A DNA stretch of 64,000 bases from Thecamonas trahens ATCC 50062. Taxonomy: Eukaryota; Protista; Apusomonadida. A program made the translations under genes and the position numbers. Where the stretch lies: the NCBI RefSeq assembly GCF_000142905.1, contig NW_013657667.1, forward strand, positions 497,052 to 561,051, given 5' to 3'. A model generated the notes under the pieces. The model did no database searches and was not told where the DNA came from. It saw nothing but the letters and a program-made list of their open reading frames with translations. Of the stretch, positions 4,603 through 62,726 are shown in pieces; the first letter of the stretch is position 1, and each line of letters starts with the position of its first letter.

Positions 4603-4635
<33 letters not shown>

Positions 4636-6937: not shown

Positions 6938-6941
6938 GTAT

Positions 6942-27189: not shown

Positions 27190-27404
27190 GCTTGACGTCT
27201 GGGTTGGTTTGCCCTTGGTAGCGCTGTCACGTGTGGGAGACGGGTGGGAGACGGATGGTGTGGGCAGAGGCGGCGGTGGCGGTCGTCCGTTGGCCGGCGG
27301 TGGCCGGCCAACGGACTGGCGGGCTGGTGGAGGCTGATGGCACAGAAGGTGATTGGCTGGTGTGTTGGCTGGCACCTTGGCCGCACTTGCTCAGTTTTGT
27401 GCAT

Positions 27405-29443: not shown

Positions 29444-29454
29444 GGTTGGGGGTG

Positions 29455-29520
29455 GGGTGGTGGGCTGGTGGTGGGCTGGTGGGCTGGTGGGCTGGTGGGC
29501 TGGTGGGCTGGTGGGCTGGC
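29455..29520. repeat. (gggctggtg)n-like minisatellite upstream of NELFCD
   Basis: Visible directly; a poly-G tract follows. Confidence 0.7.
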
Positions 29521-29690
29521 CGTCGGCGGGTCGGTGGGTTGGCAGGAGGGGGGGGGGGGGGGGGGGGGGGTTGGCATGGACTTCTCAAACTACGGTACGG
29601 TGTTACGGCAAGACTCACTTACGGCTTCTGCCGCCAGATCCGTCAGCATCTGCGTCCATCGGCCTCTTTCTACGCAAAAAAGATTTGCAC

Positions 29691-30894
29691 TTACTCGCGC
29701 TTGGTGCGCGAAGAGCCGATGGCGTCAGCATGGCGCTTGACGCGGGCAAAGAGAGTGATCGAGTCGTCCATGATAAAGCGCCAGATGACGTGGGTGTACG
29801 AGTTGTGGCTTGGGAGGTCCTCGTAGAACTCGGGGCGATGGCGCGGACCTGGTCGAGGCGCGAGCCCGGGATGGAGGGAAAGTCGTGGTGAGCGTTGTGG
29901 AGACCGACGTTAAGGATGGCCCAGCGCATGGGACCGGTGTACGAGTAGGTCTCGGTCTCGCCGTCGTCGGCAAAGACAAAGTGCTCGGCCAGAAAGTGGC
30001 CGGCGACCGGATGGAGGCCCATGCCAAAGACGTCCGAAAGGGCAAGGTAGAGGAGGGCTGCCGGACCGAAGAAGTAGCACATGGCCGTGCCGTAGGCCAC
30101 GCACGCCACAGTGTTGCACAGCTCGAGGAAGATGGGCGGGAGCGGCTTGACCACGAGCGGGCGGAAGGCGTAGAAGAAGCCCTGGAGCGAGACCCAGATG
30201 GCCTTGCCGAGCTTGCCGCGGAAGATCCGTGCCTCCAGTGCGGTGGGGATGTCGACATCCACCATGTCCACGCCCTGCTGCTTGTGGTGGATGAGGTGGT
30301 AGCGCTTAAAGGTGGCCGACGCCGGGAGGAGCATGGGCAGGTTGACGAGGATGCCAAACGCGTTGTTGATCGCCCTGTTCTTGAACAGCAGCGCATGCGA
30401 GAGCTCGTGGATGGCAAGGAGCATCGACTGCGAGGCAACGGCACCAAAGGCATACGCCACAACCACAATGCGGAGGTACGAATGGCCAGCGAGCCAAGCC
30501 GCGAGAGCCGTCTGAGTCAGCCAGAGGAAGGCCACCATCCACTTGGTCCGAGGATCATATCCCATCAGTTGCTTGATCTCCGGGTACTTGGCAAGAATGG
30601 CACGACGCCGAGACGCATGCGGCTCATCCTGTACTCGTTGCTTTGGGTGAGTCTTGCCACACAGAGGGGGCGGACAGGGGGTGGAACCTTCCCCTGCCTG
30701 CGTGGATGACGAGCAGCGAGAGCAACATTTGGTCACCCCCCCCCCCCCCCCCCGCATGTGCTGAAGAGGGAGGGGGGAGGGGGGGGACAGTGAGGGGGGA
30801 GAGGGAGGGGAGGACATACCTTGGAGCTCCAGATAAAGTCGTTGACAATGGCAGATGCCGGTGTGTCGGCGGTGTGCTCCTCGTGGGCAACCAT
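29691..30894 (-). CDS. DEGS1: Sphingolipid delta(4)-desaturase; exon 1 30894-30820, exon 2 from 30628 (frameshift near 29833)
   Basis: DFIWS|DEPHASRRRAIL..YPEIK; His boxes HELSH, HLIHH and HNAHHDFP; IAPEFY is restored after the frameshift. Confidence 0.92.
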
Positions 30895-31142
30895 GGCTGG
30901 TGGCTGGAGAGAGAGGGGTGAGAAGAACTGTGGTTCGGTCGAGTGGCGGGAACGATGGTTACGTTTGGCATCAACGATTATTAACGGTGGTTGGCAACAA
31001 TTATGAACAGTGGTCGGCAGCGGAGCTGGCCGCGTTGGCGCAATACACGTGGCAGGTTGAGACGCGGTTGGGGAAAAAAGCATGTATGGGTAGGGTAAGG
31101 TTAGGGTTACAGTGGGGGGGGGGGAGGGGGGGGGATGGGGAT

Positions 31143-33974: not shown

Positions 33975-34044
33975 CCGGGCGGAGGAAATGAGGTGGAGCC
34001 AAGTGGTGGCAAGGTGGAGGCGGAGGCGGTGGGAAGTGGGGCGG

Positions 34045-35289
34045 TCAGCGGTGCGACTCGTGAAGGCTTCGGGGAGGCTGCTCACGAGGTTTGTCACTTT
34101 GCTGATTGAGATTCTGCTGATGGGGGGGAGGTACGGATGGGGCAGTGCGACGGTAGTGGAGGAGCCAGAGGTGGGCAAGGAGGCCGTCGTCGATGGTGAG
34201 TGGGGCCGATGGGCGCGGCCGTGCGCGGGTCCAGCGCGGGCGGGCAATGTGGAGCTCGGTGGCGAGTGGGAGAAGTCCGACATGGCGGTGTGGTGAGCTT
34301 GGCAAGGCCGCGGCGGTGCGGGCGACCGGGTGGATAGGCTTGGCGGGCGGCAGCACTGGCCGGGTGGGGAGCATGAGAAGAGAGGCGGGGAGTGACGGCA
34401 CAGGCATGGCCTGCGGAGGCTGCTGCGATCGCAGCAGCCACGGCGACGGCGACGAAGAGTGCGGCGAACGGGAGGCAACCGGGCGTGACGGGGGCGTGAA
34501 CGGGGCCGGCGAGTGTGGGTCGGACCCACCGAAACCGGTTGCTGGCGAGAACGATCGCAGCTCGTTCTCCACCTTGCGCAAGGTACGAGCCGTGGTGGCC
34601 TCCTGGGCACGGAGAAGCTCGCTGTAGACGCCCGAGTGGAGGCCGGCGAGGAAGGCACGCTTGAGACGGACAAACATCGGAAGAGGTTTGGTCGCCTTGC
34701 GTGAGCGCCGGCGCTTGGTGGCTCGGCCGGCCGAGGCCGCGGTCGGTGGGCCGGCGGCCAGGACGTCGTCAAGCGTCCGCTTGCGGCTCGGCTTGGCCTC
34801 GGCAACCGGCGACGAGCCAGTAGCCGCGGCATCAGCGCCACGGGCCACGGCCGCCACGTACTCGGCCTGGATGCTCCTGGCCAAATCGGCGTATGAGAGG
34901 GTGGCGCGGCCGGCATCGAGCTCGCCGCCCCAGACCGAGGCCAGCGCCGCCGACACCGCCCGGCCGGCCGCAGTGGTGTGGCTCCGCGCATAGTTGGCGT
35001 ACGCAGTCGCCAGTGGCGTCCTACTCTCAGCATGCGCAGCAGAAGCAAACGCGGGATCAGCAGCCTTCAGAGGCATGTCGGATGGCGGCTGACTGTGAGG
35101 CGTAGCAGACGATGAGTGGTGCGGCGGAGCGAGGCCGGCCGACTCGAGAGCACGCGAGGCAGCCTTGTGCGAGAGAGCGCGAAGGGATTCTGGAGGGTGG
35201 GCGAGCGAGCATGTGTAGCAGACAACCGCAGATGCCGAAGTGATGCGCCACGAGTAGGAGTGGGTGGCGTGGCAGGAGGAGCAGAGCAT
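34045..35289 (-). CDS. Protein with an N-terminal GATA-like zinc finger
   Basis: CSSC-x17-CYTC with a WR motif; a basic NLS-like stretch (KRRRSRK); Pro/Ser-rich tail. Confidence 0.6.
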   Translation of the reverse strand: MLCSSCHATHSYSWRITSASAVVCYTCSLAHPPESLRALSHKAASRALESAGLAPPHHSSSATPHSQPPSDMPLKAADPAFASAAHAESRTPLATAYANYARSHTTAAGRAVSAALASVWGGELDAGRATLSYADLARSIQAEYVAAVARGADAAATGSSPVAEAKPSRKRTLDDVLAAGPPTAASAGRATKRRRSRKATKPLPMFVRLKRAFLAGLHSGVYSELLRAQEATTARTLRKVENELRSFSPATGFGGSDPHSPAPFTPPSRPVASRSPHSSSPSPWLLRSQQPPQAMPVPSLPASLLMLPTRPVLPPAKPIHPVARTAAALPSSPHRHVGLLPLATELHIARPRWTRARPRPSAPLTIDDGLLAHLWLLHYRRTAPSVPPPHQQNLNQQSDKPREQPPRSLHESHR

Positions 35290-35443
35290 GGCCGGGGTGG
35301 CGGGTGGCCGGGGGAGGGGTGGGGGAGAGGTGGGCAAGCGTGCGCAACGGGGAAAGAGGGAAGAGGGAGGGGAGACGGGGAGGCAAGGAAATGGTGGGCA
35401 AGGGGTTGAGGGTGGGGAAGGCTTTACTGAGAATGGGCAGAAA

Positions 35444-36797
35444 TCAGGGGATGGACGAGTACGAGTCCTTGCGGGTGATCTTAGCGTAGGTGAAGAGGAC
35501 ACCGTCCTTGACGAGGCCAGGGAACGACTTCCAGAAGCCAAGGTTGGGGAACATCTCGACGCCACGGAGGCCCTTCATCTGGAAGTTGTAGGCCATACCG
35601 GCGCCGATGTAGACGATGGTGAGGCAGAGCATGATAATGAGGATGATGGAGCCGAGCGAAAGGCCGCCCTTCTTCTTGGCCGGCGAGGAGCCGCCCGAGG
35701 AGCCGCCCGTCGACGCGCCACAGGCAGCCTTGGCTTTGGCGGTAAACTTGTACACGCAGTTGTCGGACGACACAAAGGTGAGCTTAACGTCGGCGTCGGC
35801 GACCGACTCGTCGCAGGCGATGACGAGCTGCGCCTGGTTGTCGGCGTTGCAAGTGTTCGAGTGGGCGCCATCGCCGAGTGTGATGGTCACGGTGGAGCCC
35901 GAGGTTACCACAGTCCGGGCAGACGAGAGGCCGAGCGTCTTCATCCCGGAGCTCCACTCCTGGCAGACAGCCACGCCCGAGTCGGTGCACTTGGTCGACG
36001 AGAGCGAGCCGCACGGCGAGACCTTGTACGTAAACGTACCGTCCACAACCGAAAAGTCACCGCTGTACCCTCATCCAAAGCCGTCGCGCCAGCACGCGCA
36101 CACATGACACACACGACACGCACGCGTGCACCACCCCCCCCCCCCCCCCATCGCAGTCGTCAGTACCATTCGTCCACAGTGTGAGTTGTCGCCGACGACA
36201 CACCGTCACATGCTAGTGCTGTCCGTCGCACCGCCGGCACCATGCAAGTCGGAGCAAGCGCATGGACACATGGAGAGATAACAGAGATGGCACACATCGT
36301 AGTCTATCCCTTGCAGAACATCACTGGCAGTGGTATGGCTGGAGAAGGGGGGGAGGGGAGGGGGGGGAGGGGGAGAGGGGGGGACGCAACAGGCGGCGGC
36401 TGGCGGAGGATTCATGAAAATTGCATACGCCAGCCGGAGACACGCCCTGCCGCGGACAGGCAAGGAGGAGCGATAGCGCCCCCCCTATCAGGATAAAGAG
36501 CAAGTAGGGATGATGTAGGATGTGTGTGCATGCTCCGCCGTCAAACTATGTCTTCAAACACATTGTCTGCCCCCTGACAAGAGCAAGTGGAACGGGCAGG
36601 GTGCGGTGGAGGAATTTTTCGCATGCGCAAGCGACTGGCCGACGGGGGGTACAGGCAAAGGAAAGGCAAGGGGGGAAGGGGAGGGAGAGAGCGGGGACGT
36701 ACTTGTTGCCAAGGTTGGAGAAGCCCGAGGGGCAGTTGTCAGCAAAGGCAGTTGCCACCAGGACAGCCACTACAAGTGCCACACCGATGAACTTCAT
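35444..36797 (-). CDS. Cation-dependent mannose-6-phosphate receptor / ATG27-like type I membrane protein; exons 36797-36703 and 36062-35444
   Basis: Signal peptide, an MRH-like domain, a TM, the cytosolic G.E.FPN..FW...P.LV.DG motif and a C-terminal YSSI sorting motif. GTACGT-CAG intron. Confidence 0.85.
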
Positions 36798-37239
36798 GGC
36801 GAACGAGAGTCGAGTGGTGGAGGGGGGGGGGGGAGGGGAGGGGAGGAGGGGAGGTGGGGGGAGAGGGAGGGGGGGGGGGGCTGTCAGGGAGGGGCTCATG
36901 TCACGTGTCACGCTGAGCCCTTTATGGTACGGAATGGACAGTTTTGTCCATCGCGCCAGCCGCGCTCCGCGACGCTCCTCAGACGTCGCAACGTCCATCA
37001 ATCGCGGTAAAAGGGTAGTATGATGTGTTAATGGCTGCCACAACAGAAAACAGCCGGCGATGCAGAGATGGGACGCCGCACGCGGCGCGGAAGGTCTGCG
37101 GCCGCGATCGTTTACCATGGAGCTTCGGGCAGGCGAGGCAGTCGCGTCGCAAAGCGGCTTGCTGGGGAGAGTGGTGATGACAAGCAGCCAGCCGCTGCAG
37201 AGGGACGCTTCCGCTTGCGCGACGGCGTGGAGCTGGCGG

Positions 37240-51817: not shown

Positions 51818-54800
51818 TCAGACACGGCAGAACTCGTCCTCCGGCAGGGCGGCGATGAGGTCCTTGACCTCGGCCATTGTTGGTCGATCTGCGGCGAGCG
51901 GCGCCCACGCCCTGCCGAGCACCGCGCCGAGCCGCGGGCCGCACCCGCCGTACGGGACGTTCCCAGCCATGATCTTCTGCGCCACATCGAGCGGCGACTC
52001 CCCGGTAAACGCCCTCTGCCCAGTCACGACCTCGTACACCGTGGACGCGTACGAGAAGACATCGGTGGCCGACGTGTCTGCACTGCTCCCGGCGAGCACC
52101 TCAGGCGAAGAATATATGATGGATGACGTTGACGAGAGCACAGAGAGTGTTCCGCGGAGCGCAGAGAGCCCAGCGTCGGTGAGCGTCACCCGCGACCCGC
52201 CCGAGTCGTAGAGCATGACGTTGGACGGCTTGACCGAGCCATGGACGAAGTTGTCAGCGTGGAGCGAGGCCAGCGTCTCGGCGAGCGCCACCGCAACTCG
52301 CCGCGCAAACGCGCCACCGACCCGCCCAGCATCCACCGCCGCCGCCAGCGAGCCATGTTCCACCAACGGGTAGATGATGCCGAGGCACGGCTTGAATGGG
52401 CAGATGGCGAGCGGGTGGACCACAAGGTCCTTCTCCGACTGGTGAGACATTCGGAAGACAGAGGCCATCGCCGCTACAAGCTCCACCACGTCCTGCGGCC
52501 CGAGATCCTGCTCGGAGAGGAGCTTGACGAGCACAGCCTGCCCGTCGATGTCCGAGATGCAGATCCGCGCAAACGAGCCCATGCCGACCTCGGTGGCGTG
52601 GGCGAGAACGCGGATCATTTCCGGAAGCGCGATGAGAATGGGCGAGCCACACCCGAGCTCCGGCAGCGAGAGCGTTTGGTTGGCAAACATATGCTTGGTC
52701 GTCTCGGCTCGCGCACAGCCGCGACCGCGAGCCGAATCGATTTTTGCTTCCCTATCCTGCCGCTGGCCAGAGGCAATCCGTGGAGACGCCTCGCTCACTA
52801 ACGAGACCACGCCCCAGTAGCCCAGAGCTTCGGCTCCTCCACCATTTGCCCTCGGCAGCTCTCCCGACACGCGAGAGACCCGCGGCGTTGCCACATCCAG
52901 CAGCTTTCGGAACTTGAGGTTTGAGACCGGGAGTTCCCTGTTGGCACGGGGCCGCCTCGACACACCCGACCCGCGTCGAGAAGCCGAGAGGGTGTACGAG
53001 CCCGAGCCGCGGGTCGAGCCCGTCCCACCATCGGTCCCCTCGCCCATCGAGTCGGACGAAAAGTTGGGAAACTGCTGCGCTGACGCGGTCAGCGCACACA
53101 GCGTGGCCTCAACAGCGTCGCCCAGCCCGGGAGCCACAAACACACCACTCGCCGCTGACGGTGCCGTCGTCGACACGAGCTCATCGACAACTGGACCTCG
53201 AAACGCGAGATATGTTCCGGAAAACGGTCTGCTTAGACTGCGGTTGAGGGTCTCGATCCGCCCGTCGGCGGCCACCACTCGGGCCTCGACTCGCGTTCCG
53301 GAGAGCGCCGCAAGAAACTTGGAGGTAAAGGCCACAAAGTGGCACGGCAACGGAAAGACAACCAGGACATGAGTAAGCGTCCAGTCAGCAACCCTGCCCT
53401 GTATCTCAGGAGCGTTCTGAAGCAGATGGCCAATGGTTCGGTGAAAAGTGGTCAGTGCCGCGTGAGTCTCCTCGAGCGCCGCGGTCACAGCCTGCGCGTT
53501 TTCGGTGACTGAGATAAGCGCGGCAACGACGTGGCCCTCAGGCCGGGCAATGGTTGTCGGGAGAACCACCGAGGAGCGCGAGTACAGCCCCCGCAACTGA
53601 GCCGCAAGCCGCGAGAAGCTTGGCCGTTCTTCAGGCTCATGCTCCCACGCTGCTGTCATCAGCGGCACGTACGCCTCACCCCACTCGGGCACAAGTCCGA
53701 GCAGCGGCCGGCGGACGGCGGCCGCAACGTCATTGGCTGCCACCACCGGGTGTGTCCCCTTGTATGGCTCGGTCCGCGTCAGCATCTCCCACATCGTAAT
53801 GCCAAAAGCATAGACATCGGCCGCCGGCGAGAGTCCGGCCTCACCGTCGACCACCACCTCGGGTGCGACCCAAAGGAGCGATGAGAGGTTGTCGCCGGCC
53901 ACAGCTGGCATCTTGGCGGCGTTTGCATCCAGAAACGACGCGTCCGACGGCGAAGGCATGATCGAACCTTGTTCTGACATGCTCACTTCAGAAAGCCGTG
54001 AGTGCAGCGGGCTCCGCGACGTATTTGCGCCATCAGCGAGAACGGCAATCGGTCGGTGCGCGCCGTACGCCGCAGCCTTAATTCGCGGAATACCCACGTC
54101 GGCGAGCTTGGGTACCCACCCGGCGTCAAGCAAGATGTTGGGCGATTTGAGGTCCGAGTGGATGGCGCCGGCCTGGTGCAGAAAGTCGACGCCAAGTGCA
54201 ATACAGTGCATCCACCAGCCGAGAAGCGACTGCGGGAGGTTGAACTCGGCGTTGTGCAAGATGGCATGGAGCGAGCCGCGAGGTAGAAACTCGGTCACAA
54301 TGCCGCGTGCCTCGACGTCGGCGCCCATGAACATGACAATGTTTGGATGCCGGAGCATGGCGAGCGACATGAGCTCGGCCACAAACTCGAGGTCAGAGAG
54401 CCTGGGGCCAGCGCCGGACTGGCCCTCGCGGACGCGCTTGACCACTACCGGCGAGCCGCGCCACTGTGCCTCAAACACAGTGCCAAACGAGCCGGTCCCT
54501 ATTACGTTGCCAATTCTGAGCTCGTGGCTCGGGATGATGATCGAGTGCGAAGGGAGCGCCGATGCCGGGACCGTCACACGCTCGTGCTTCCGGCTTGACC
54601 ACAGCACAATGCCGGCCACAAGAGCGCAGACGCAGATAACCACCAGTGGAACAGTGATTGCCGCAGCAAGCGCCCCGGTCGACAAGACCGGCTCATCGCT
54701 TGCGCCACAACCGGGGCCAATACATACCTGCGAGAGCGGGAGCGCGCCGCACGTACACGTTGCCAGATTTGCAGCAACGGCGGTGAGCGTCGCGTTGGTC

Positions 54801-57145
54801 AGCGGCGCAAAGAAGAGCGAGCGGAGGAGCGCCCGTGTATCGCTTGATGCCAGTGCCCAGCGAAGGTAGTCAAAGGCAGCTCGGCGCTTGGCACAAACCG
54901 CCGTCGACGAGCACTCAAAGACCCAGTACGTGTACCCCACCAGAGGCCACGCCAGCGGCACAGGCTGATCCACCAGCGTCTTGACGAGTGGAAGCAGTGC
55001 GTTGGTCGCCGGAACATTGACTGCATTCGCTGCCGCAGCCCTCACTGTCAGCGGCGTGGCGTCGACTACGTCGCCGGCGGCATTGATCAGCGATGCGAAC
55101 CGGAGTGAGAGTGCCGATGCCATGTGTCCGCTTGCGTAGCCGAGGCCCGAAGTCTCAAACGCAAACTCGTAGACGAGCGCACCCATCGTGGAGTGTTCGA
55201 CCAGGCATGGCACTGGCCAGTCGCCGGCTTGGGCAAGCTGAGCCAGCGCCGCTGCGTCGGACGAGAACGACGCCAGTGCGTCGAGAAGGATGCGCGTCTC
55301 ACCTGACATCTCCGCCGCAGCAGGCGTGAGGACATGGATGCAGATGGTGGAGTTGGGAAGCCAGGGCGCAAGCTCCGGATTAAGCGCCACAATCTGTGAG
55401 TCGGCCCACTGGGTGACACGGCCGAGATAGATGTCGGCAACGACGTGGCGCGAGAGCACGAGCCGCGTGAGCGTGGTCGGCGCACCTGTGCGAAATGGAA
55501 TGACATACGGTAGAACAACAGCAGCGGCGGCAAACGGGACGGCAGCAAGGCCTGGACGCGCCGTGAGATGGTTTTCAAGCGGTGGGAGCTCGGTCGAGGC
55601 AAAGACCGCGCGTCGGGTGACGAGTTCGTCGAGCCCGTCGAGTGAGGAAGAGCGCGAAAACTCAACGCGCGAGCCAAACATAGCGTTGTACACCTCAACC
55701 GATTGCTCAAGGGCTGAAGCCGCGAGTGGTGAGCCCGAGCCTACAATGAGCTCGCTCGAGCCGTCAGCAATGTACTCGCCGTTGCAGTTGGCGAGGTAGA
55801 TCTCGCGGTCGAGCGCCGAACGTGCCATCGACGGCACCACGCGTGTCCCGTACAGCCAGGCTCGCTCAGAGACGATGAGCGAAGAGAGTGCACGTCGGAT
55901 GCCGTTCGCTGTCTGGCGCATCAGCTCGCACGTCTCGCGCGGAACCTTGGTGGCCAACGTCGGAATGGCGAGCCACTCGCCATGCGTCAGCGGCCAGGCA
56001 CGGGGCAGCGGAGCAAGGAGCACGTTGACGTTTGGCGACGCCAGCGTCGACGCAGCAACTTCTACACTCTGCTCCGAGACTTGTACATGCCCACCAGTGC
56101 CATCGATCATGGTGGCGACAAAGAGATCGCGCGAGACGCCGGTGGCGACAAAGGCTTCCGAAGTTACAATGGTGAATGAGTACGGTGTCCGTGGAATGGC
56201 GCGGGTGGCAGCCAGGAGCGCGAGCCACGCATTTGTAGGCTCGTTGCTATTACTTATGTACATCACGTTGGTTGAGGTGCCGAACGGGACTTGATTCGGA
56301 GGGAGGTTGGAGAAGAGCGACGCGTTGTACGTCCCGCGCTCCTCCATCACCGAGAGCATGTCGCGGACGACTAGGTCCTCGACAAACGGCAATATCGCAC
56401 GGATAAGGACAACGTGATGGTCGGGCAGTGCAAGGCCTGGATTGACAGCCGCGATGCGCGGGTCATCCCACCTCGTGATCGAGCCGTGCCAGAGAGCGGC
56501 GACGAGTTCGGCGTCGAGAACGAGGCCAGGCATGAAGCCGGGTACATTGACCATCGGCACAATGTAGGAGACAGCAATTGGCATGTATGAGATCCGGGTC
56601 CAGTCAGTCCCATGTGTTCCGGTCTCGGCGCAAAGAACCTCTGAGCGGCGCGCCGCGTCGGTGGCGAGCGTGTCAGCGCCGCCGCCATCACCGCCACCAG
56701 ACGTCGACGATGACGGCGGCGGCGGCGGCGGAGCGACATGCGTATCCGCCAGGCCCTTGCAAGCATCCAGGAGAACACGGCGCGAAGCCGAGACAACGAT
56801 GGAGACTCGTCGTGGTTCGTCCGGCGAAAACGGCTGCCGCCGGTTGGCGTTGTTGTCGCGCACGAGGCCGAGCGGCGGCTCGCCGCGGGCTGTGGCATGG
56901 AGCTCAGCAAGAGCATCAGGAATGGCTGCACCTTGAAAGTGCGGCTGCCACGTCGACCGAATGAGCCGCGAGGCAAAGCGCGCAAGGCCGGTGCCCGATG
57001 AGAAGCCCGCCGCAATCGAGGTAAAGTACTCGACCTCTGTCTCGGGGGGTCCAGAGTCGGCTGAGTGCGCCAAGTGGGCCAAGACGACGAGTGCGACAGC
57101 GGCGAGACAGACCGTCTGTGGTGCCCTCCACACCGCCTTACCCAT
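51818..57145 (-). CDS. Receptor kinase A: signal peptide, two PstS-like domains (degenerate), TM, TKL kinase, cyclase-like domain, pseudokinase
   Basis: ITRWDDPRIAAVNP and IYLGRVTQWADSQIVALNP (PstS-like); TM ITVPLVVICVCALVAGIVLW; GTGSFG, HSDLKSPN, DVG, APE; second kinase HGSVKPSN. Confidence 0.9.
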   Translation of the reverse strand: MGKAVWRAPQTVCLAAVALVVLAHLAHSADSGPPETEVEYFTSIAAGFSSGTGLARFASRLIRSTWQPHFQGAAIPDALAELHATARGEPPLGLVRDNNANRRQPFSPDEPRRVSIVVSASRRVLLDACKGLADTHVAPPPPPPSSSTSGGGDGGGADTLATDAARRSEVLCAETGTHGTDWTRISYMPIAVSYIVPMVNVPGFMPGLVLDAELVAALWHGSITRWDDPRIAAVNPGLALPDHHVVLIRAILPFVEDLVVRDMLSVMEERGTYNASLFSNLPPNQVPFGTSTNVMYISNSNEPTNAWLALLAATRAIPRTPYSFTIVTSEAFVATGVSRDLFVATMIDGTGGHVQVSEQSVEVAASTLASPNVNVLLAPLPRAWPLTHGEWLAIPTLATKVPRETCELMRQTANGIRRALSSLIVSERAWLYGTRVVPSMARSALDREIYLANCNGEYIADGSSELIVGSGSPLAASALEQSVEVYNAMFGSRVEFSRSSSLDGLDELVTRRAVFASTELPPLENHLTARPGLAAVPFAAAAVVLPYVIPFRTGAPTTLTRLVLSRHVVADIYLGRVTQWADSQIVALNPELAPWLPNSTICIHVLTPAAAEMSGETRILLDALASFSSDAAALAQLAQAGDWPVPCLVEHSTMGALVYEFAFETSGLGYASGHMASALSLRFASLINAAGDVVDATPLTVRAAAANAVNVPATNALLPLVKTLVDQPVPLAWPLVGYTYWVFECSSTAVCAKRRAAFDYLRWALASSDTRALLRSLFFAPLTNATLTAVAANLATCTCGALPLSQVCIGPGCGASDEPVLSTGALAAAITVPLVVICVCALVAGIVLWSSRKHERVTVPASALPSHSIIIPSHELRIGNVIGTGSFGTVFEAQWRGSPVVVKRVREGQSGAGPRLSDLEFVAELMSLAMLRHPNIVMFMGADVEARGIVTEFLPRGSLHAILHNAEFNLPQSLLGWWMHCIALGVDFLHQAGAIHSDLKSPNILLDAGWVPKLADVGIPRIKAAAYGAHRPIAVLADGANTSRSPLHSRLSEVSMSEQGSIMPSPSDASFLDANAAKMPAVAGDNLSSLLWVAPEVVVDGEAGLSPAADVYAFGITMWEMLTRTEPYKGTHPVVAANDVAAAVRRPLLGLVPEWGEAYVPLMTAAWEHEPEERPSFSRLAAQLRGLYSRSSVVLPTTIARPEGHVVAALISVTENAQAVTAALEETHAALTTFHRTIGHLLQNAPEIQGRVADWTLTHVLVVFPLPCHFVAFTSKFLAALSGTRVEARVVAADGRIETLNRSLSRPFSGTYLAFRGPVVDELVSTTAPSAASGVFVAPGLGDAVEATLCALTASAQQFPNFSSDSMGEGTDGGTGSTRGSGSYTLSASRRGSGVSRRPRANRELPVSNLKFRKLLDVATPRVSRVSGELPRANGGGAEALGYWGVVSLVSEASPRIASGQRQDREAKIDSARGRGCARAETTKHMFANQTLSLPELGCGSPILIALPEMIRVLAHATEVGMGSFARICISDIDGQAVLVKLLSEQDLGPQDVVELVAAMASVFRMSHQSEKDLVVHPLAICPFKPCLGIIYPLVEHGSLAAAVDAGRVGGAFARRVAVALAETLASLHADNFVHGSVKPSNVMLYDSGGSRVTLTDAGLSALRGTLSVLSSTSSIIYSSPEVLAGSSADTSATDVFSYASTVYEVVTGQRAFTGESPLDVAQKIMAGNVPYGGCGPRLGAVLGRAWAPLAADRPTMAEVKDLIAALPEDEFCRV

Positions 57146-57608
57146 TGTATACGGACGAGGGGGTAGGAAGGCTAGTAGAGCGGTTGTGGCGGACAACGAG
57201 ATAGGTGGAGCAAACAACGAACTACTTGCTTGACTTCATGTGCTAGGAGCGACGAACACTGCGTGAGCCGCAGGTCGTGCGTTTGCGGCTTAGCGTGCTG
57301 ACATGTCCCAATATTTTTAGATTGGGGTCCCGTCCCAACCATGGCTCGACTGCAAAACAGCAGAGTCCGCGCCTCACTGGAGTGACAGCGTTGTCCGGGG
57401 CTTGGAAGTTCACGAGCGTGCAAAGTGGGCAAGGGTAGCGGGCTGATACGGTTGCCGGCTGGTACGGTTGTCGGCTACTTGGTGAGGAGGGGGTGGGGGG
57501 AGGTTGGGGGGTTGGGGGGGGTTGCTTGACTGCAAATGTTCCACACTTAGCTTTGGCAGACAGTCAGATTGGCATACAAAACAACGATATTCCACCTGTC
57601 TCTCGCCT

Positions 57609-60600
57609 ATGCGGCTCAAAACAGCGTTTGTGCTCACACTCCTTGCCGCACTTGCTGTTGCGAGTACAAGGGGTAAGCAGCCAGCTTGGGAACGAGACAA
57701 CGCCAGCGACGATGGTAGCGACAACAACGACGGGAGCTTTTCCGTCACCGCCGCACATGTCCAAGTCGGCGAGGTGCTTGCGGGCGTGACGGTTGCATCA
57801 CGTTTGGCAGAGTTTGCTGGCCGAGCGGCCATTATTGGTGAAAACGGAATAAGCGGCACAGCATGGAAGCCGAAGTTGAGGGCGACGTCGTTTGACGAGG
57901 GGCTCGACCTCTTGCTGGCCAACTTGCCGACTGCGGTGAGCAATGGACCATGGAAGCCGAATGCCGAGGTTGGCTTGGAAGATGCGGCCGCTTTGGCGGC
58001 GGGAGGCGAGGCGCCGTCGTTTGTGACTGCGGCGCTCGGGACGGCAGTGGGGACGCGGGACGTTGTTGACCGCAAGTGTGCGGGACTCGGGTTGAGCAAG
58101 TGCGGCGAGATGCTGGAGATTTTCCCATGGGCACTCTCACACCTGATTCCAACGATCAACTTGCCTGGCGTCGGCTCGTCGCTTGTTCTCGACTTACACT
58201 TGCTCCACGAGATTCTCTTGGGCGAGATTACAATGTGGAACGACCCGGAGATTGCGGAGCTGAACCCCGGCCGGCTGCTCCCAAGCTCACCCATTACGCT
58301 CATCTCGTACCCCGAGCTCGCGATCACTGATGTGTTTGAAGCCTTGCTTACCAACGATACCCACGACGAGGCGCCGCTGTTCTCGTCGTCGAACACGATC
58401 GAGACGGAGGATGCGATAGCGGCAGCGTCGATGCTGTTCGCGACGAGCAACTCACTGGCTATCCTCACGTCGCAGACGGTAACTCAGGGTGGATACACGC
58501 GACTTGTCATCCCCAAGTTGATCAATGCTGCTGGCGTGGTGGTGTCTTATAGCGAGCGGAGCGTGACGGCAGCGGCGGCGTTGCTCGACGACGACGCGTC
58601 CGAAGCGCTCAACTCGAAGGCCGAGGACGCGTGGCCGCTTGTCTTTACCGAGTGGATGGTCATGCCTTCCAAGATCCAAGGTGTGGATCCTCAATTTTGC
58701 AGCGCCATGGTCTCAAGCATGTCAGGAGTCAAGTTCCTCATCTCGTCGCTCTTTATTACCGAGCGGCTGTGGCTGTACGGGCATGTGCCGCTGCCGCGTG
58801 CGCTGCGCTCGATTGTGGTGCAGCGGTTGCAACAGTTTGAGTGTAATGGAGTAGAGCTGGCGGTATCTGTCGACCGGGTAGACGGCGCCGGCGCGACGTT
58901 TCCTTCAAACGTCTACGTCCAGGCCATTGAGTTGTTCAACGTCCTCACCTCGTCGCAACTCTCGTATTCTCCCGTTGGCTCTGGAACAGGCAAGGCAAGG
59001 CTGGTGGCTGGCCAGATGCTGTTTGCCGGCTCTGACTCGGCGCTCTCGGACGCAGACCTCAACGCGGTCCCCACTCTTGTGCAGCTACCCTCGCTTGCCG
59101 GCGCAGTGGCCATCTCGTACAAGATCAAGATGACTTCCGATGCACCGGCGTTGGTGCCGACGCTTGTGCTCTCGCGATCTGCGCTTGCCGACATTTACCG
59201 TGGCGCGATTACGGCGTGGAACCATCCGCAGATCGAGGCGCTCAATCCAGGCCTCGCGCCGTACTTGACCAATGCGACAATTTGCATCCACGTGGTCGAC
59301 TTTCGGTCAGGAACCACGGGTATTCTCACGGCGGCACTCTCGACTTTTTCGCCAGCGTGGGCGGCAACGATTGGCGAGACTACGTACATCGACGAGTGGC
59401 CGGCCGAGCGACCAGAGACGGGTGGTTGCGTGGTGCGCCACCCAACCAAGACGTCGCTCGTGAACGGCATGTTTGCGGATCCAAACGCCATTGGCTACTC
59501 CAATCTCGAGCGGGCACAGCGACTTGGTGTCCCACTCGCCTCGCTAGTCAACCGGGCAGGAACGACGGTCGAGGCCTCAGCGGCCACGGTCCAGTCGGCG
59601 ATTATCGACGCCCAAGACCGGAATGCGCCCAACTCGCGGCTTCCGTACGTCAAGCCGCTGGCTAATGGCGGCTCGCAACTCTCGTGGCCGATTTCGGGCT
59701 ACACGTACTTTGTCATGGACTGCCACGCGAAGAGCAACTGCGACAAGTTACGGCAAGCAGCCAAGTTTTACCAGTGGCTTGTCACGTCACCGGACGCGTC
59801 CGTCATTGCGTCGTCGCTCGGCTTTGCCGCGCTGCCCAACGTGACCACAATGCTGACGGTGGGCGAGCTCGAGCGCTGCACCTGCGGCGGCCGCCCGCTT
59901 TTGGATCCGTGCTCGGACGGGCTCTGCGCAGACGCAGCCACATCGACAGGAATCTCTGCGGGGACGATTGTGGCGATTTTGGTTCCGCTGGTGGTGATGG
60001 TTGTGGTGTGCGGCGTGCTCGCCGCCGTCTGGATCCACTCGCGGTCCCGTGACGTGGTGTTCAAGCTGGAGGTTGACGAGGACATCCTTGTGGCCAATGA
60101 GGAGCTTGAGCTAGGCAGTGCAATTGGGACCGGTTCGTTCGGAACTGTGTACCTGGCGCACTGGCGCGGCTCACCGATGGCCATCAAGTACATGCACGGG
60201 CTGGAGGAGAACACGGCCCGACTGGCCGAGTTTGTGGACGAGGCCTCGGTCCTGCTCAAGCTCCGACACCCACACATTGTGCTGTTTATGGGCGTTGTGC
60301 TCGAGCCGGCCGGCATCGTTACCGAGTTCCTCCCGCATGGCTCGCTTTACACAGTCCTGCACAACTCGGAGTTGCAGATCGAGCGCAACCTCGCGCTGTG
60401 GTGGATGCACTGCATTGCCATGGGCCTGGACTTTCTGCACCACGGTGGCATGGTCCACCGCGACATGAAGTCGCTTAACGTCCTACTCGATGCGGGATGG
60501 GTGCCCAAGATCTGCGACTTTGGCCTCTCGTCGTGCAGTGAGTCTTCAGCATCCATGTCGCTCTCGAGGAAAGAGCAGTCAAGGCGGGCACGCAAGCTCA

Positions 60601-62726
60601 AAAAGCTTGTCAGCAAGATGAACAAGAGAAATGGCGCCAAGTTGCACTCGCTCGGCTCGGCCAGGCATACGGCCGGTTTGTCGTCGAGGAGCTCGCTCAA
60701 CTCGGCAGGTTCGGGTGGATCCAACGGCTCGAGCGCGGGTGGTTACGGGACGAGCAACGGGGTCAACGCCGCACTCGGCTCGTTGCTGTGGACGGCACCC
60801 GAGGTGCTGCAGAACGGCGCCAGTGCATCATCACCTGCGTCTGATGCGTTCGCCTTTGCCATCACGGCATGGGAGATTCTGACGCGTATGGAGCCGTATG
60901 CAGGGATGCACCCGGTGGCGGCGGCGACCAAGGTGTCGGATGGGAGCCTGCGCCCGATTCTTGGCGTTGTGCCCGACTGGGGCAAGTCGGTGGTGCCCTT
61001 GCTCGAGGAGGCGTGGCACGCTCAGCCGACGGCGCGGCCGCCGCTCTCTGTCATCGGCAAGAAGCTCTCGTCGCAGTATGTGCGCAAGCAGATTGTGCAC
61101 CCGATGCCGGCGAATCTGCCGAGCGGTGAAGTGGTGGCTGTTCTTATCTCGTGTTCGGAGAATGTCGCCCAACTTAGCGTCGACGTGGGCGAGTGTCGCG
61201 AGGCACTGCTCGCCTTCCATGGCATGCTTGACACGCTCGTGGGCGCGCCGAGCTGCAGCGGCGTTATCGCCGATCGAACCCTCGCACACGCAATGGTTGT
61301 GTTCAACGTCCCGGCGCACTTTGCATCGTTCGCAGCCGATGCTCTCCGGATGATGGGCAGTGGACCGATGCGTGTCAAGATGGTGGCGGCACACGGCACG
61401 ATTGTGACGGTTGCACAGGGCGGGACCGAGAACTCAGACCAGCGGTTGCTTCAGTTCTCAGGCCCCGTGATATCCGAGATTCTGTCGCGCAACGCGCCAC
61501 TTGAGGTCACCGGCATCCTTGTTGCTCCGAGCCTCACCGGCCCGGTGGTCGAGGCGGTGGCGGCGTTCAAGGACGCCGCGGCGTCCAACACAGCCGACGT
61601 GATTACGGACATTGGCTCGACCCTCGACTCGGCTTTCCCGGACAACCGAAGTGAGGTGCGGACACCATACGACTCGATGATGCTGGCTGGCGCCAGTGGA
61701 CAAGGGCTTGGTATCGCGGTCGTCCGGGACTCGACTGAGAGCGGATGGGCGATGGTGGTAAGCGAGACCACAACCAGCACGGCGGCGCCGGCTGAGATGA
61801 CGCATGCGTCGCTGGTGCCGGCATCATCGGTCAACTCGCTGACAAGTGAGCGGCTCACGCTCTCGGCACTCCAGAGCGGGTCGTCGTTCTTGGTCTCCGG
61901 ACCGGTGATGAAACGGGTGCTGGCCAAGGGGAGCGAGCTGTGTGTCGGCTCGTTCTCACGGGTGGCAGCGTCGGATGCAGACGGGTCACCGGTGGTGACC
62001 AAGACTGTGCTCGAGCAGACCATGTCGTCGGTGGCACTGGTTGAGCTTGTCATGGCCATGGCGTTGCAGTTTGAGCTCATCAAGTCTTTGCCGGATGCAG
62101 TCCTCGCTCCCATCGCTGTCTGTCCGTTTCGGCCGCACATCTCAGTCATGTACCCGCTGGTCGAGCTCGGCTCGATCGGCGACGCCATCGCTGCTGGGAA
62201 CTTTGGTGGCGAGTTCTCCCGCCGTGTCTCGGTGGCGCTGGCGCGGGCGCTGTTTGCGCTCCACACCGAGGGCGTGACGCACGGCTCGATCAAGCCGAGC
62301 AATGTAATGCTTATGGAGGCGAGCGGGTCCAAGGTCACACTTATGGATGTAGGCATCAATGGCATCAAGACCTCGCTCTCCACCATGACAATGTCGCCAT
62401 CGGTCTCGTACTCGTGCCCCGAGGTGCTCAACGGCGAAGCCGTTGGACAGGGCTCGGACATCTTTGGCTTTGCATCGACGGTCTTTGAGCTTGTCAGCGG
62501 TAAGCAGGCGTTCACCGGCATCAACGCCATGCAGGTCGCGTACAGGATCATGTCCAGCACAGTACCACCCACGGCACACATCCATCCGGAGCTTGCTGCG
62601 CTGCTTGTCTCGTGCTGGGCACCGGCTGCGTCAGACCGACCCCATATGTCGGAGGTTGTCCAGCACTTGTCGCGGTTCACCTCGCTCGAGTTTACGGTGG
62701 CAGGGACTGTCGGCGGCGAGCGGTAA
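57609..62726 (+). CDS. Receptor kinase B: signal peptide, two PstS-like domains, TM, TKL kinase, cyclase-like domain, pseudokinase
   Basis: GAGATFP, YSPVGSGTG, FAGSD and RSGTT (PstS motifs); TM IVAILVPLVVMVVVCGVLAAVWI; GTGSFG, AIK, HRDMKSLN, DFG, APE; second kinase HGSIKPSN. Confidence 0.93.
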   Translation: MRLKTAFVLTLLAALAVASTRGKQPAWERDNASDDGSDNNDGSFSVTAAHVQVGEVLAGVTVASRLAEFAGRAAIIGENGISGTAWKPKLRATSFDEGLDLLLANLPTAVSNGPWKPNAEVGLEDAAALAAGGEAPSFVTAALGTAVGTRDVVDRKCAGLGLSKCGEMLEIFPWALSHLIPTINLPGVGSSLVLDLHLLHEILLGEITMWNDPEIAELNPGRLLPSSPITLISYPELAITDVFEALLTNDTHDEAPLFSSSNTIETEDAIAAASMLFATSNSLAILTSQTVTQGGYTRLVIPKLINAAGVVVSYSERSVTAAAALLDDDASEALNSKAEDAWPLVFTEWMVMPSKIQGVDPQFCSAMVSSMSGVKFLISSLFITERLWLYGHVPLPRALRSIVVQRLQQFECNGVELAVSVDRVDGAGATFPSNVYVQAIELFNVLTSSQLSYSPVGSGTGKARLVAGQMLFAGSDSALSDADLNAVPTLVQLPSLAGAVAISYKIKMTSDAPALVPTLVLSRSALADIYRGAITAWNHPQIEALNPGLAPYLTNATICIHVVDFRSGTTGILTAALSTFSPAWAATIGETTYIDEWPAERPETGGCVVRHPTKTSLVNGMFADPNAIGYSNLERAQRLGVPLASLVNRAGTTVEASAATVQSAIIDAQDRNAPNSRLPYVKPLANGGSQLSWPISGYTYFVMDCHAKSNCDKLRQAAKFYQWLVTSPDASVIASSLGFAALPNVTTMLTVGELERCTCGGRPLLDPCSDGLCADAATSTGISAGTIVAILVPLVVMVVVCGVLAAVWIHSRSRDVVFKLEVDEDILVANEELELGSAIGTGSFGTVYLAHWRGSPMAIKYMHGLEENTARLAEFVDEASVLLKLRHPHIVLFMGVVLEPAGIVTEFLPHGSLYTVLHNSELQIERNLALWWMHCIAMGLDFLHHGGMVHRDMKSLNVLLDAGWVPKICDFGLSSCSESSASMSLSRKEQSRRARKLKKLVSKMNKRNGAKLHSLGSARHTAGLSSRSSLNSAGSGGSNGSSAGGYGTSNGVNAALGSLLWTAPEVLQNGASASSPASDAFAFAITAWEILTRMEPYAGMHPVAAATKVSDGSLRPILGVVPDWGKSVVPLLEEAWHAQPTARPPLSVIGKKLSSQYVRKQIVHPMPANLPSGEVVAVLISCSENVAQLSVDVGECREALLAFHGMLDTLVGAPSCSGVIADRTLAHAMVVFNVPAHFASFAADALRMMGSGPMRVKMVAAHGTIVTVAQGGTENSDQRLLQFSGPVISEILSRNAPLEVTGILVAPSLTGPVVEAVAAFKDAAASNTADVITDIGSTLDSAFPDNRSEVRTPYDSMMLAGASGQGLGIAVVRDSTESGWAMVVSETTTSTAAPAEMTHASLVPASSVNSLTSERLTLSALQSGSSFLVSGPVMKRVLAKGSELCVGSFSRVAASDADGSPVVTKTVLEQTMSSVALVELVMAMALQFELIKSLPDAVLAPIAVCPFRPHISVMYPLVELGSIGDAIAAGNFGGEFSRRVSVALARALFALHTEGVTHGSIKPSNVMLMEASGSKVTLMDVGINGIKTSLSTMTMSPSVSYSCPEVLNGEAVGQGSDIFGFASTVFELVSGKQAFTGINAMQVAYRIMSSTVPPTAHIHPELAALLVSCWAPAASDRPHMSEVVQHLSRFTSLEFTVAGTVGGER

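What the first reader, a model, noticed from the sequence alone, without database searches (positions are those of the whole stretch)
51818..62726. Head-to-head pair of PstS-domain receptor kinases: a candidate extracellular phosphate-sensing heterodimer
Seen: two paralogous ~1700-aa intronless genes diverge from a ~460-bp spacer (ATGs at 57145 and 57609). Both have the order SP-PBP-PBP-TM-kinase-linker-kinase. In gene B the membrane-proximal PBP keeps the PstS phosphate-contacting motifs (GAGATFP, VGSGTG, FAGSD, SGTT) and kinase 1 is a canonical HRD/DFG kinase. In gene A the same positions are degenerate (GSGSPLA, SSSLDG, FASTE, SGET) and kinase 1 is non-RD (HSD/DVG). Knowledge: PstS is the bacterial ABC-transporter phosphate-binding protein, and a similar PBP-kinase-cyclase-kinase layout is recalled for amoebal and mimivirus receptor kinases whose function is uncharacterised. 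Inference: a co-regulated sensor plus co-receptor pair transducing external phosphate or another oxyanion, unlike the SPX/inositol pyrophosphate sensing known in eukaryotes.
Basis: partly seen in the sequence, partly recalled or inferred. Interest (0 to 1): 0.85.

Follow-up and report, generated by a model that had tools for sequence, protein, structure and literature searches.

The report
Paired PstS-domain receptor kinase genes
Two back-to-back genes of the protist Thecamonas trahens encode surface receptors that join bacterial-type phosphate-binding modules to a protein kinase; they belong to a receptor family already described in Acanthamoeba and giant viruses, and nothing yet shows that they sense phosphate or work as a pair.

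Summary
Window 51818-57145(-) and 57609-62726(+) are uninterrupted ORFs of 1775 and 1705 aa, 463 bp apart and head-to-head, in Thecamonas trahens ATCC 50062. Both read signal peptide, PstS-like domain 1, PstS-like domain 2, TM helix, TKL kinase, dead class III cyclase-homology domain, pseudokinase.

The layout is not new. It is published for 67 Acanthamoeba receptors and occurs in Pandora-, Molli-, Moumou- and Medusavirus. The Thecamonas version differs in having a dead cyclase and a dead second kinase.

A and B are sister paralogs (99/99 support), with A on a branch twice as long. They sit within at least 7 PstS-kinase genes scattered over six contigs, and only A and B are adjacent. A local inverted duplication therefore explains the pairing.

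B's PBP2 models as PstS (TM 0.9) and keeps 7 of 9 phosphate-site residues, but lacks Arg135 and scores below NCBI's PstS cut-off. A's site is degenerate.

RNA-library contigs cover both genes. A small culture-type transcriptome covers only B.

The scan has noted related PstS receptors on other pieces of this genome (s1-743485, s1-742076). The latter keeps an intact site and is the better phosphate-receptor candidate.

The parts
51818..57145 (-). Gene A: 1775-aa receptor (signal peptide, PstS-like 1, PstS-like 2, TM, non-RD TKL kinase, dead cyclase-homology domain, pseudokinase)
   Evidence: Continuous ORF. Pfam PBP_like_2 8e-7 and kinase 1e-60. P0003 in public collections is identical from residue 60. 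RNA-library contigs X1 and X3 lie on it.
55763..56815 (-). A PBP1 (about residues 111-461), degenerate PstS-like domain
   Evidence: phmmer with E. coli PstS 2e-11. TIGR00975 64 bits. No phosphate-site residues kept.
54659..55762 (-). A PBP2 (residues 462-829), PstS-like domain with a degenerate site (P L S E L E S G E at E. coli T10 F11 S38 D56 R135 D137 S139 G140 T141)
   Evidence: TIGR00975 112 bits against a cut-off of 205.
54590..54658 (-). A transmembrane helix (about residues 830-852)
   Evidence: Hydropathy peak of 2.95.
53576..54538 (-). A kinase 1 (about residues 870-1190). It is non-RD (HSD) with DVG. Lys, Glu, Asp, Asn and APE are kept. It lacks the basic motif found in the activation-segment insert of the paralogs.
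53072..53569 (-). A cyclase-homology domain (residues 1193-1358), catalytically dead
   Evidence: jackhmmer 6e-52 to B's domain. The profile matches the viral/amoebal cyclase profile at 98.2%.
51821..52663 (-). A kinase 2 (about residues 1495-1775), a pseudokinase (HGS in place of HRD, DAG)
   Evidence: 45% identical to B kinase 2, its closest copy in the genome.
57146..57608 (.). 463-bp divergent intergenic spacer with a G-run tract at 57487-57531
   Evidence: Sequence. No RNA-library contig lies on 57158-57354 in any of four runs, and next to none on 57355-57551, where only X3 shows depth 0.32.
57609..62726 (+). Gene B: 1705-aa receptor with the same layout and an RD kinase 1
   Evidence: Continuous ORF. 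Pfam PBP_like_2 3e-22 and kinase 3e-64. RNA-library contigs in X1, X3, X9 and X10.
57696..58853 (+). B PBP1 (about residues 30-415), degenerate PstS-like domain
   Evidence: phmmer with E. coli PstS 3e-15. TIGR00975 73 bits.
58854..59963 (+). B PBP2 (residues 416-785), PstS-like domain with site T F S D V F S G T. Arg135 is missing, and an Arg sits directly before the SGT motif.
   Evidence: PDB PstS E 7e-26. Site table. TIGR00975 164 bits against a cut-off of 205. AF2 pLDDT 90.7; the top 49 PDB folds are all phosphate-binding proteins, with TM up to 0.90.
59967..60041 (+). B transmembrane helix (about residues 787-811)
   Evidence: Hydropathy peak of 3.16.
60081..61103 (+). B kinase 1 (about residues 825-1165), a TKL kinase with HRD, DFG and APE, and a long activation-segment insert holding a basic motif
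   Evidence: The nearest solved kinases are CTR1, B-RAF and TAK1.
61086..61643 (+). B cyclase-homology domain (residues 1160-1345), catalytically dead
   Evidence: hhalign 98.2%, E 3.7e-14, against the viral/amoebal cyclase profile. AF2 model pLDDT 67.7. All listed top PDB folds are class III cyclases or cyclase-like proteins.
61869..62723 (+). B kinase 2 (residues 1421-1705), a pseudokinase (HGS, DVG)

Best explanation
A and B are two single-pass receptor kinases of Thecamonas trahens. They arose from one another by a local inverted duplication. They belong to an apusomonad branch of the known 'PBP_like_2 x2, TM, TKL kinase, class III cyclase, kinase' receptor family of Acanthamoeba, Physarum and amoeba-infecting giant viruses. 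Shown here: the domain order, the homology of each domain, the loss of catalytic residues in the cyclase-like domain and in kinase 2, the sister relation of A and B, and the presence of both genes in RNA libraries. Inferred mechanism: a small ligand closes the membrane-proximal PstS-type clamshell (PBP2). This changes the arrangement of a receptor dimer that is held together by the dead cyclase-homology domain, because class III cyclase domains work as dimers. The RAF/CTR1-like kinase 1 is the only catalytic output, and kinase 2 serves as a regulatory pseudokinase. B is the slowly evolving copy and most likely binds phosphate or a similar tetrahedral oxyanion, probably more weakly than PstS because Arg135 is gone. 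A is the fast-evolving copy, with a rebuilt and more acidic pocket and a non-RD kinase. It most likely has a different ligand or none, and its own regulation. The head-to-head arrangement is a relic of the duplication and is not by itself a sign of partnership.
For: Organism and public annotation as TKL kinases. ORFs. Two PstS-like domains in each protein. B PBP2 has the PstS fold. Site residues. One TM helix. Kinase 1 motifs and their nearest solved relatives. Linker is a cyclase-homology domain with the metal-binding Asp residues replaced by Ser and Leu. Kinase 2 has HGS in all Thecamonas-type copies against HRD in the viral ones. Same architecture in Pandoravirus, Moumouvirus, Mollivirus, Medusavirus, Endostelium and Fabomonas. 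[quoted passage not shown] A and B are sisters at 99/99 with branch lengths of 1.43 and 0.67. The PBP2 tree does not reject this (AU p 0.129). Inverted DNA similarity of 71-75% remains only in the conserved kinase 1 and PstS stretches. There are at least 7 PstS-kinase paralogs and only A and B are adjacent, while another subfamily forms a same-strand triplet on contig 64, so local duplication is common in this family. RNA-library contigs lie on both genes, with a gap over the spacer.
Against: No ligand, dimer or output was measured. B lacks Arg135, one of the main phosphate contacts in E. coli PstS (established from the Quiocho-laboratory structures), and scores 164 bits against the 205-bit PstS equivalog cut-off, so its specificity may have changed. 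All Thecamonas kinase-type paralogs lack Arg135, which hints that the whole clade left phosphate behind. The PBP2 tree does not itself recover A and B as sisters. Dimerisation through the dead cyclase domain is an analogy, not a result.
Confidence: 0.55

Rival explanations
1. B is the phosphate-binding sensor and A is a ligand-blind co-receptor. The two are co-transcribed from the shared 463-bp spacer and signal as an obligate A/B heterodimer.
For: The site is asymmetric: B keeps 7 of 9 residues and A keeps 3 of 9. The kinases are asymmetric: B is RD and A is the only non-RD copy, and A has lost the basic activation-segment motif. Both carry a cyclase-homology domain, a fold that works as homo- or heterodimers in solved cyclases. 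A and B kinase 2 domains are each other's closest copies (45%). Both genes appear in two independent metatranscriptome studies. From knowledge, not tested here: sensor plus degenerate partner pairs exist, such as sGC alpha/beta, RAF/KSR, and plant non-RD receptors with BAK1.
Against: Sisterhood explains both the adjacency and the closeness of kinase 2. No other family member is paired. A relative with genomic context has an unrelated upstream gene. The small culture-type transcriptome (X9/X10) has contigs on B only. No interaction test could be run. A divergent orientation is common by chance in a compact genome.
Confidence: 0.12
2. Neither receptor senses phosphate. The PstS fold was recruited as a general ligand-binding scaffold, and in the kinase-type clade it has been retuned to other small molecules such as prey- or bacteria-derived cues. 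B is simply the least-changed copy.
For: Arg135 is absent from all six Thecamonas kinase-type PBP2 domains. B is below the PstS equivalog cut-off, whereas the 9-TM paralog on contig 48 passes it at 228 bits with an intact site. The viral homologs have fully degenerate sites. The family is expanded to 67 copies in Acanthamoeba, and that pattern fits diversified ligands better than one nutrient.
Against: B keeps Thr10, Phe11, Ser38, Asp56 and the Ser-Gly-Thr helix cap. These include the Asp56 that gives PstS its preference for protonated phosphate over sulfate (knowledge). B also has an Arg directly before that cap which might replace Arg135. The pocket architecture is modelled with pLDDT above 90.
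Confidence: 0.28
3. Gene A is a decaying duplicate with no function of its own.
For: It has the longest branch in the family (1.43 against a median of about 0.7-1.0). Its ligand site is degenerate. It has lost the conserved basic motif. No contigs lie on it in the culture-type transcriptome, and a frame-breaking splice form was seen once.
Against: It is a 1775-codon ORF with no stop. All kinase 1 catalytic residues are kept (Lys, Glu, Asp, Asn, DxG Asp, APE). The signal peptide and TM helix are kept. RNA-library contigs from two studies cover it.
Confidence: 0.05

Closest known systems
Acanthamoeba castellanii receptor 'nucleotidyl cyclases' (67 genes; Clarke et al. 2013, PMC4053784) and the 43 Physarum homologs (PMC4758236)
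   Same: [quoted passage not shown] The ligand and function are unknown there too.
   Different: In the Thecamonas copies the cyclase domain has lost the metal-binding Asp residues and no longer reaches Pfam's model. Kinase 2 has HGS in place of HRD. No Pfam EGF domain is found, only a short Cys motif. The organism is an apusomonad, not an amoebozoan.
Giant-virus 'serine/threonine protein kinase receptors' (Pandoravirus, Mollivirus, Moumouvirus, Medusavirus)
   Same: They are among the best matches in 1.84 billion representatives (E 1e-100 to 1e-109) and have the same domain order.
   Different: The viral copies keep HRD in both kinases and a Pfam-detectable Guanylate_cyc domain. Their PstS-like sites are fully degenerate.
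Bacterial PstS (E. coli 1IXH; NCBIfam TIGR00975)
   Same: Full-length homology and fold for PBP2 (E 1e-22 to 7e-26; TM 0.88-0.90). B keeps Thr10, Phe11, Ser38, Asp56, Ser139, Gly140 and Thr141.
   Different: PBP2 is fused to a membrane kinase instead of serving PstCAB. Arg135 and Asp137 are replaced. It scores below the equivalog cut-off (164 bits against 205). It forms a tandem with a degenerate first copy.
Thecamonas PstS, Ephrin_rec_like, multi-TM protein on contig 48 (earlier scan finding s1-742076)
   Same: Same tandem PstS ectodomain. It is the sister group of the kinase-type PBP2 clade.
   Different: Its phosphate site is intact (S F S D R D S G T) and it passes the PstS cut-off at 228 bits. 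Its output is a multi-pass membrane module, not a kinase.
Animal membrane guanylyl cyclase receptors (GC-A/NPR-A)
   Same: Periplasmic-binding-protein-type ectodomain, one TM helix, kinase-like domain and cyclase domain. They act as dimers. The GC-A intracellular domain is among the fold matches.
   Different: In GC-A the kinase-like domain is the dead part and the cyclase is the output. Here it is the reverse. The ectodomain is a type I (ANF_receptor) PBP, not the PstS type.
Pseudomonas aeruginosa PstS-CtpL phosphate chemotaxis (reviewed in PMC8050422)
   Same: A PstS-type clamshell used to signal external phosphate to a membrane receptor.
   Different: There the proteins are separate and the output is a chemoreceptor. 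Here they form one polypeptide with a eukaryotic kinase output.

Membership tests
PBP_like_2-TM-kinase-cyclase-kinase receptors (Acanthamoeba / giant-virus type) | Signal peptide and a single TM helix separating the ectodomain from the cytoplasmic part | tested here: met
   Hydrophobic N-termini and one strong helix each, A 830-848 and B 787-805.
PBP_like_2-TM-kinase-cyclase-kinase receptors (Acanthamoeba / giant-virus type) | [quoted passage not shown] | tested here: met
   Pfam PF12849. E. coli PstS finds two domains in each protein. TIGR00975 hits all four domains.
PBP_like_2-TM-kinase-cyclase-kinase receptors (Acanthamoeba / giant-virus type) | EGF domain between the PBP domains and the TM helix | tested here: inconclusive
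   No Pfam EGF hit in A or B. A 4-5 Cys motif (CTCG..C..C) sits at that place. Pandoravirus P0008 has EGF_2 there.
PBP_like_2-TM-kinase-cyclase-kinase receptors (Acanthamoeba / giant-virus type) | Class III cyclase domain between the two kinases | tested here: met
   Homology and fold are met: hhalign 98.2%, E 3.7e-14, and all listed top Foldseek matches are class III cyclases or cyclase-like proteins. Catalytic residues are tested separately below.
PBP_like_2-TM-kinase-cyclase-kinase receptors (Acanthamoeba / giant-virus type) | Two catalytically competent kinase domains | tested here: not met
   Kinase 1 is competent (HRD in B, HSD in A). Kinase 2 has HGS, so it has no catalytic Asp, in A, B and all Thecamonas-type copies. 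The viral copies have HRD twice.
PBP_like_2-TM-kinase-cyclase-kinase receptors (Acanthamoeba / giant-virus type) | Sequence relatedness over the ectodomain plus kinase | tested here: met
   Pandoravirus, Moumouvirus and Mollivirus proteins at E 1e-100 to 1e-109, with matches in both the PBP and kinase parts.
PstS phosphate-binding protein (TIGR00975 equivalog) | PstS fold (type II periplasmic binding protein) | tested here: met
   B PBP2 model has pLDDT 90.7. The top 49 PDB matches are phosphate-binding proteins, with TM 0.88-0.90 and rmsd 2.5-2.9.
PstS phosphate-binding protein (TIGR00975 equivalog) | Score above the curated equivalog cut-off (205 bits) | tested here: not met
   B PBP2 scores 164, A PBP2 112, B PBP1 73 and A PBP1 64 bits. 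The contig-48 paralog scores 228 bits and passes.
PstS phosphate-binding protein (TIGR00975 equivalog) | Phosphate-contact residues Thr10, Phe11, Ser38, Asp56, Arg135, (Asp137), Ser139, Gly140, Thr141 | tested here: not met
   B has T F S D V F S G T, so Arg135 and Asp137 are lost and an Arg sits directly before Ser139. A has P L S E L E S G E.
PstS phosphate-binding protein (TIGR00975 equivalog) | Binds orthophosphate | not testable with these tools
   This needs ITC or fluorescence titration of the recombinant domains.
PstS phosphate-binding protein (TIGR00975 equivalog) | Delivers phosphate to a PstCAB transporter | not tested
   The domain is covalently fused to a receptor kinase. PstC and PstA were not searched for in the genome.
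Class III nucleotidyl cyclase (enzyme) | Two metal-binding Asp residues and the transition-state Asn/Arg | tested here: not met
   In the hhalign alignment the Asp positions are Ser and Leu, and the Asn position is Ile in B and Val in A. Pfam Guanylate_cyc does not hit.
Non-RD kinase (gene A kinase 1) | The Arg before the catalytic Asp is replaced, and the catalytic residues are otherwise kept | tested here: met
   A has HSDLKSPN, DVG, the VVVK Lys, the alpha-C Glu and APE. All other paralogs have HRD.
Sensor / co-receptor heterodimer | Physical A-B interaction that is better than A-A or B-B | not testable with these tools
Sensor / co-receptor heterodimer | Co-expression from the shared spacer | tested here: inconclusive
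   Contigs of two metatranscriptome studies lie on both genes. X9/X10 have contigs only on B. Contigs cannot give expression levels.
Sensor / co-receptor heterodimer | Pairing recurs in paralogs or in relatives | tested here: not met
   The other PstS-kinase genes sit alone on contigs 75, 39, 30, 49 and 58. Relative P0004 has a Band_7 gene upstream. True orthologs of A and B in other species were not available.

The most novel reading that the evidence does not exclude
B is a true receptor for external orthophosphate (or arsenate or another oxyanion) in a eukaryote. It signals through a RAF-like kinase, and A is its ligand-blind, non-RD partner, held to it through the dead cyclase-homology domains. 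This would be a membrane phosphate-sensing receptor-kinase pair with no counterpart in the SPX/inositol-pyrophosphate systems.
Probability: 0.1. Interest if true: 0.8.

Novelty: new variant of a known kind. Interest (0 to 1): 0.4.

Why it matters
How eukaryotic cells perceive phosphate outside the cell is still poorly understood. A PstS clamshell fused to a kinase is a direct, testable candidate, and the domain can be expressed and titrated. This analysis places the Thecamonas genes in a large receptor family of Acanthamoeba, Physarum and giant viruses whose function is unknown, and extends that family to apusomonads and, through Fabomonas, to ancyromonads. In the Thecamonas branch the cyclase and the second kinase have become non-catalytic scaffolds, so kinase 1 is the only catalytic output. 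Within this genome the analysis ranks the candidates: the contig-48 protein has the intact site, B is second, and A is not a phosphate binder. The claim itself remains modest. The architecture is published, the pairing has a simple duplication explanation, and no ligand is known.

Tried and rejected
2. The search for homologous proteins on B residues 416-800 gave a single hit, which reflects the limits of word-based search. The exhaustive representative search was used instead.
3. The PBP2 tree leaves the position of A against B open. The AU test does not reject A and B as sisters (p 0.129), so sisterhood rests on the intracellular tree.
4. The sigma-70 promoter and terminator scan of the spacer found nothing. 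It is not meaningful for a eukaryote.
5. Two RNA joints were examined. The one from 56493 to 56870 (376 nt, non-canonical ends, 8-nt overlap) is taken as an assembly or template-switch artefact. The one from 55372 to 55509 is recorded under Noticed in passing.
6. Gene conversion between A and B was considered. It was rejected because the inverted DNA similarity is only 71-75% and is confined to conserved coding stretches.
7. Side-chain geometry of B's displaced Arg could not be inspected, because model coordinates are not returned.
8. Literature searches for a described PstS-kinase phosphate receptor in eukaryotes, or in Thecamonas, found none.
Full report
WHAT IS THERE. The window is the end of contig 13 of Thecamonas trahens ATCC 50062 (G000:C13:497052-561051). 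A paralog on another contig is the public protein XP_013754394.1, 'TKL protein kinase [Thecamonas trahens ATCC 50062]'. The ORF listing shows two long open frames, 51818..57217(-) and 57504..62726(+). From the first ATGs (57145 and 57609) they give 1775 aa (gene A) and 1705 aa (gene B), and the ATGs are 463 bp apart. A public model of A (P0003) is identical to the ORF from residue 60 to the end, so no intron is needed.

DOMAINS. Pfam finds PBP_like_2 (A 8e-7, B 3e-22) and kinase domains (1e-60 and 3e-64), but no cyclase. Mature E. coli PstS (L028) finds two PstS-like domains in each protein by phmmer: A at 2e-11 and 1e-13, B at 3e-15 and 2e-24. NCBIfam's PstS equivalog TIGR00975 hits all four domains, with B PBP2 at 164 bits, A PBP2 at 112, B PBP1 at 73 and A PBP1 at 64, against a cut-off of 205. 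B PBP2 matches solved PstS proteins at E 7e-26 to 1e-22. Its AlphaFold model (pLDDT 90.7) has phosphate-binding proteins as its 49 best PDB matches, with TM up to 0.90 and rmsd 2.5-2.9. Each protein has one strong TM helix.

Kinase 1 is a TKL kinase nearest to CTR1, B-RAF and TAK1. B has HRD, DFG and APE. A has HSD, DVG and APE with all catalytic residues kept, and it is the only non-RD copy in the family.

The 'linker' is a cyclase-homology domain. A profile of the Thecamonas-type linkers aligns to a profile of the viral and amoebal cyclase domains at 98.2% probability, E 3.7e-14. The AlphaFold model of B's linker (pLDDT 67.7) has class III adenylyl/guanylyl cyclases and cyclase-like proteins as all of its listed top PDB matches. 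The two metal-binding Asp positions are Ser and Leu, and the transition-state Asn is Ile or Val, so the domain is catalytically dead. Kinase 2 has HGS where HRD should be, in A, B and all Thecamonas-type copies. The viral homologs keep HRD. Kinase 2 is therefore a pseudokinase.

THE PHOSPHATE SITE. The domains were aligned with E. coli PstS at positions T10 F11 S38 D56 R135 D137 S139 G140 T141.
- B PBP2 reads T F S D V F S G T.
- A PBP2 reads P L S E L E S G E.
- Both PBP1 domains are degenerate.

B keeps seven of nine positions but has lost the Arg135/Asp137 pair. An Arg sits directly before the Ser-Gly-Thr cap (also seen), and whether it can replace Arg135 could not be checked. All other Thecamonas kinase-type paralogs also lack Arg135. 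The non-kinase paralog on contig 48 reads S F S D R D S G T and passes the PstS cut-off at 228 bits. B is therefore a plausible but unproven oxyanion binder. A is not a phosphate binder. The best phosphate-receptor candidate in this genome is the contig-48 protein, which the scan reported earlier (s1-742076).

FAMILY AND PAIRING. The genome holds at least seven PstS-kinase genes: A and B on contig 13, and others on contigs 75, 39, 30, 49 and 58. It also holds a PstS/Ephrin_rec_like/multi-TM gene on contig 48 and a short PstS+TM gene on contig 62. The kinase/cyclase-like/kinase module occurs in 50 or more places. Besides A/B, the only adjacent copies are three same-strand genes on contig 64.

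A maximum-likelihood tree of the intracellular part puts A and B together at 99/99, with A's branch (1.43) twice as long as B's (0.67). The PBP2 tree is unresolved inside the kinase-type clade and does not reject A and B as sisters (AU p 0.129). Inverted DNA similarity of 71-75% survives only in conserved coding stretches. The simplest account of the head-to-head arrangement is an old local inverted duplication followed by faster change in A.

Two marine metagenome relatives (P0004, P0005) form the outgroup of the Thecamonas radiation. P0004 has a Band_7 gene just upstream, not a partner.

EXPRESSION. All available runs are assembled contigs, so only presence can be read. In two metatranscriptome studies (X1 seawater, X3 subsurface) contigs lie on both genes. 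No contig lies on 57158-57354 in any of the four runs, and next to none on 57355-57551, where only X3 shows depth 0.32. That gap argues for RNA rather than DNA carry-over. In the small organism-labelled transcriptome (X9 and X10, apparently one data set filed twice) contigs lie on B only. This shows that both genes are transcribed somewhere. It does not show co-regulation.

COMPARISON WITH WHAT IS KNOWN. The best matches among 1.84 billion representatives, after Thecamonas paralogs and two metagenome relatives, include kinases of Pandoravirus, Moumouvirus and Mollivirus. Medusavirus, Endostelium and Fabomonas proteins share the layout. Pfam on the viral proteins gives PBP_like_2 x2, (EGF), kinase, Guanylate_cyc, kinase.

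Clarke et al. [quoted passage not shown] They proposed that the ectodomain receives external stimuli (PMC4053784). Physarum has 43 such proteins (PMC4758236), and the family has moved between amoebae and viruses (PMC5203793).

What is different here is the lineage (Apusomonadida), the loss of cyclase and kinase 2 catalysis, and, in B, an unusually well-kept PstS pocket. No paper in the library describes a PstS-kinase phosphate receptor in eukaryotes. A bacterial precedent for PstS as a signalling module is PstS-CtpL (PMC8050422).

MECHANISM (INFERRED). The ligand closes PBP2. The receptor is probably a dimer held by the dead cyclase-homology domain, since class III cyclase domains act as dimers (established knowledge). 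The RAF/CTR1-like kinase 1 is the only catalytic output, and kinase 2 regulates. Kinase 1 of B, C75, C39 and C49 carries a conserved basic motif in a long activation-segment insert that A has lost, which suggests that A is regulated differently.

Whether A pairs with B, with itself or with nothing is open.

VERDICT. The finding is a new variant of a known receptor family and is of moderate interest.

Noticed in passing
window 55373-55508 (minus strand, inside gene A PBP2): One metatranscriptome contig (X3) skips 136 nt with GTATGT..AG ends on the gene's strand. The skip is not a multiple of 3 and gives a stop at codon 641. It removes the best-conserved PstS motif. An X1 contig spans the same place unspliced. 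This is a rare or aberrant splice form.
   Followed up: partly
window 57487-57531: A long G-run tract lies in the A/B spacer, about 80 nt upstream of B's ATG. It could form a G-quadruplex. No RNA-library contig lies on 57158-57354 in four runs, and next to none on 57355-57551.
   Followed up: no
window 60520-60800 (B kinase 1 activation segment) and paralogs L021, L024, L025: The long insert between DFG and APE holds a conserved basic motif (SRK.QRRRAR.L..L) in B, C75, C39 and C49. Gene A has this motif deleted. It may be a regulatory or membrane- or calmodulin-binding element.
   Followed up: partly
window about 59880-59960 (B) and about 54660-54740 (A): A short 4-5 Cys motif (CTCG..C..C) lies between PBP2 and the TM helix in A, B and the paralogs. 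This is the place where Pandoravirus and Acanthamoeba homologs carry an EGF domain, so it is probably an EGF remnant.
   Followed up: no
G000 contig 64, about 25800-37135: Three genes of the kinase/cyclase-like/kinase family lie in tandem on one strand. They have no PstS match, so they probably carry other ectodomains. This shows that local duplication is common in the family.
   Followed up: no
L024 (G000:C49) 2842-8171 and L026 (G000:C58): The contig-49 paralog reads in two overlapping frames (863 aa, then 984 aa), yet it is annotated publicly as one 1671-aa protein, so an intron or frame change lies near the TM region. The contig-58 copy is split over four frames and may be a multi-exon gene or a broken one.
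   Followed up: partly
P0096 (Fabomonas tropica transcript) and P0006 (Chromosphaera perkinsii): An ancyromonad has PBP x2 with near-intact sites (S L S E R D S G T) joined to a kinase. An ichthyosporean has four PstS domains (three with near-intact sites) joined to Ephrin_rec_like and a TRP-like membrane part. PstS-type ectodomains on eukaryotic membrane receptors are therefore widespread.
   Followed up: partly
No link to the receptors was found or sought.
   Followed up: no
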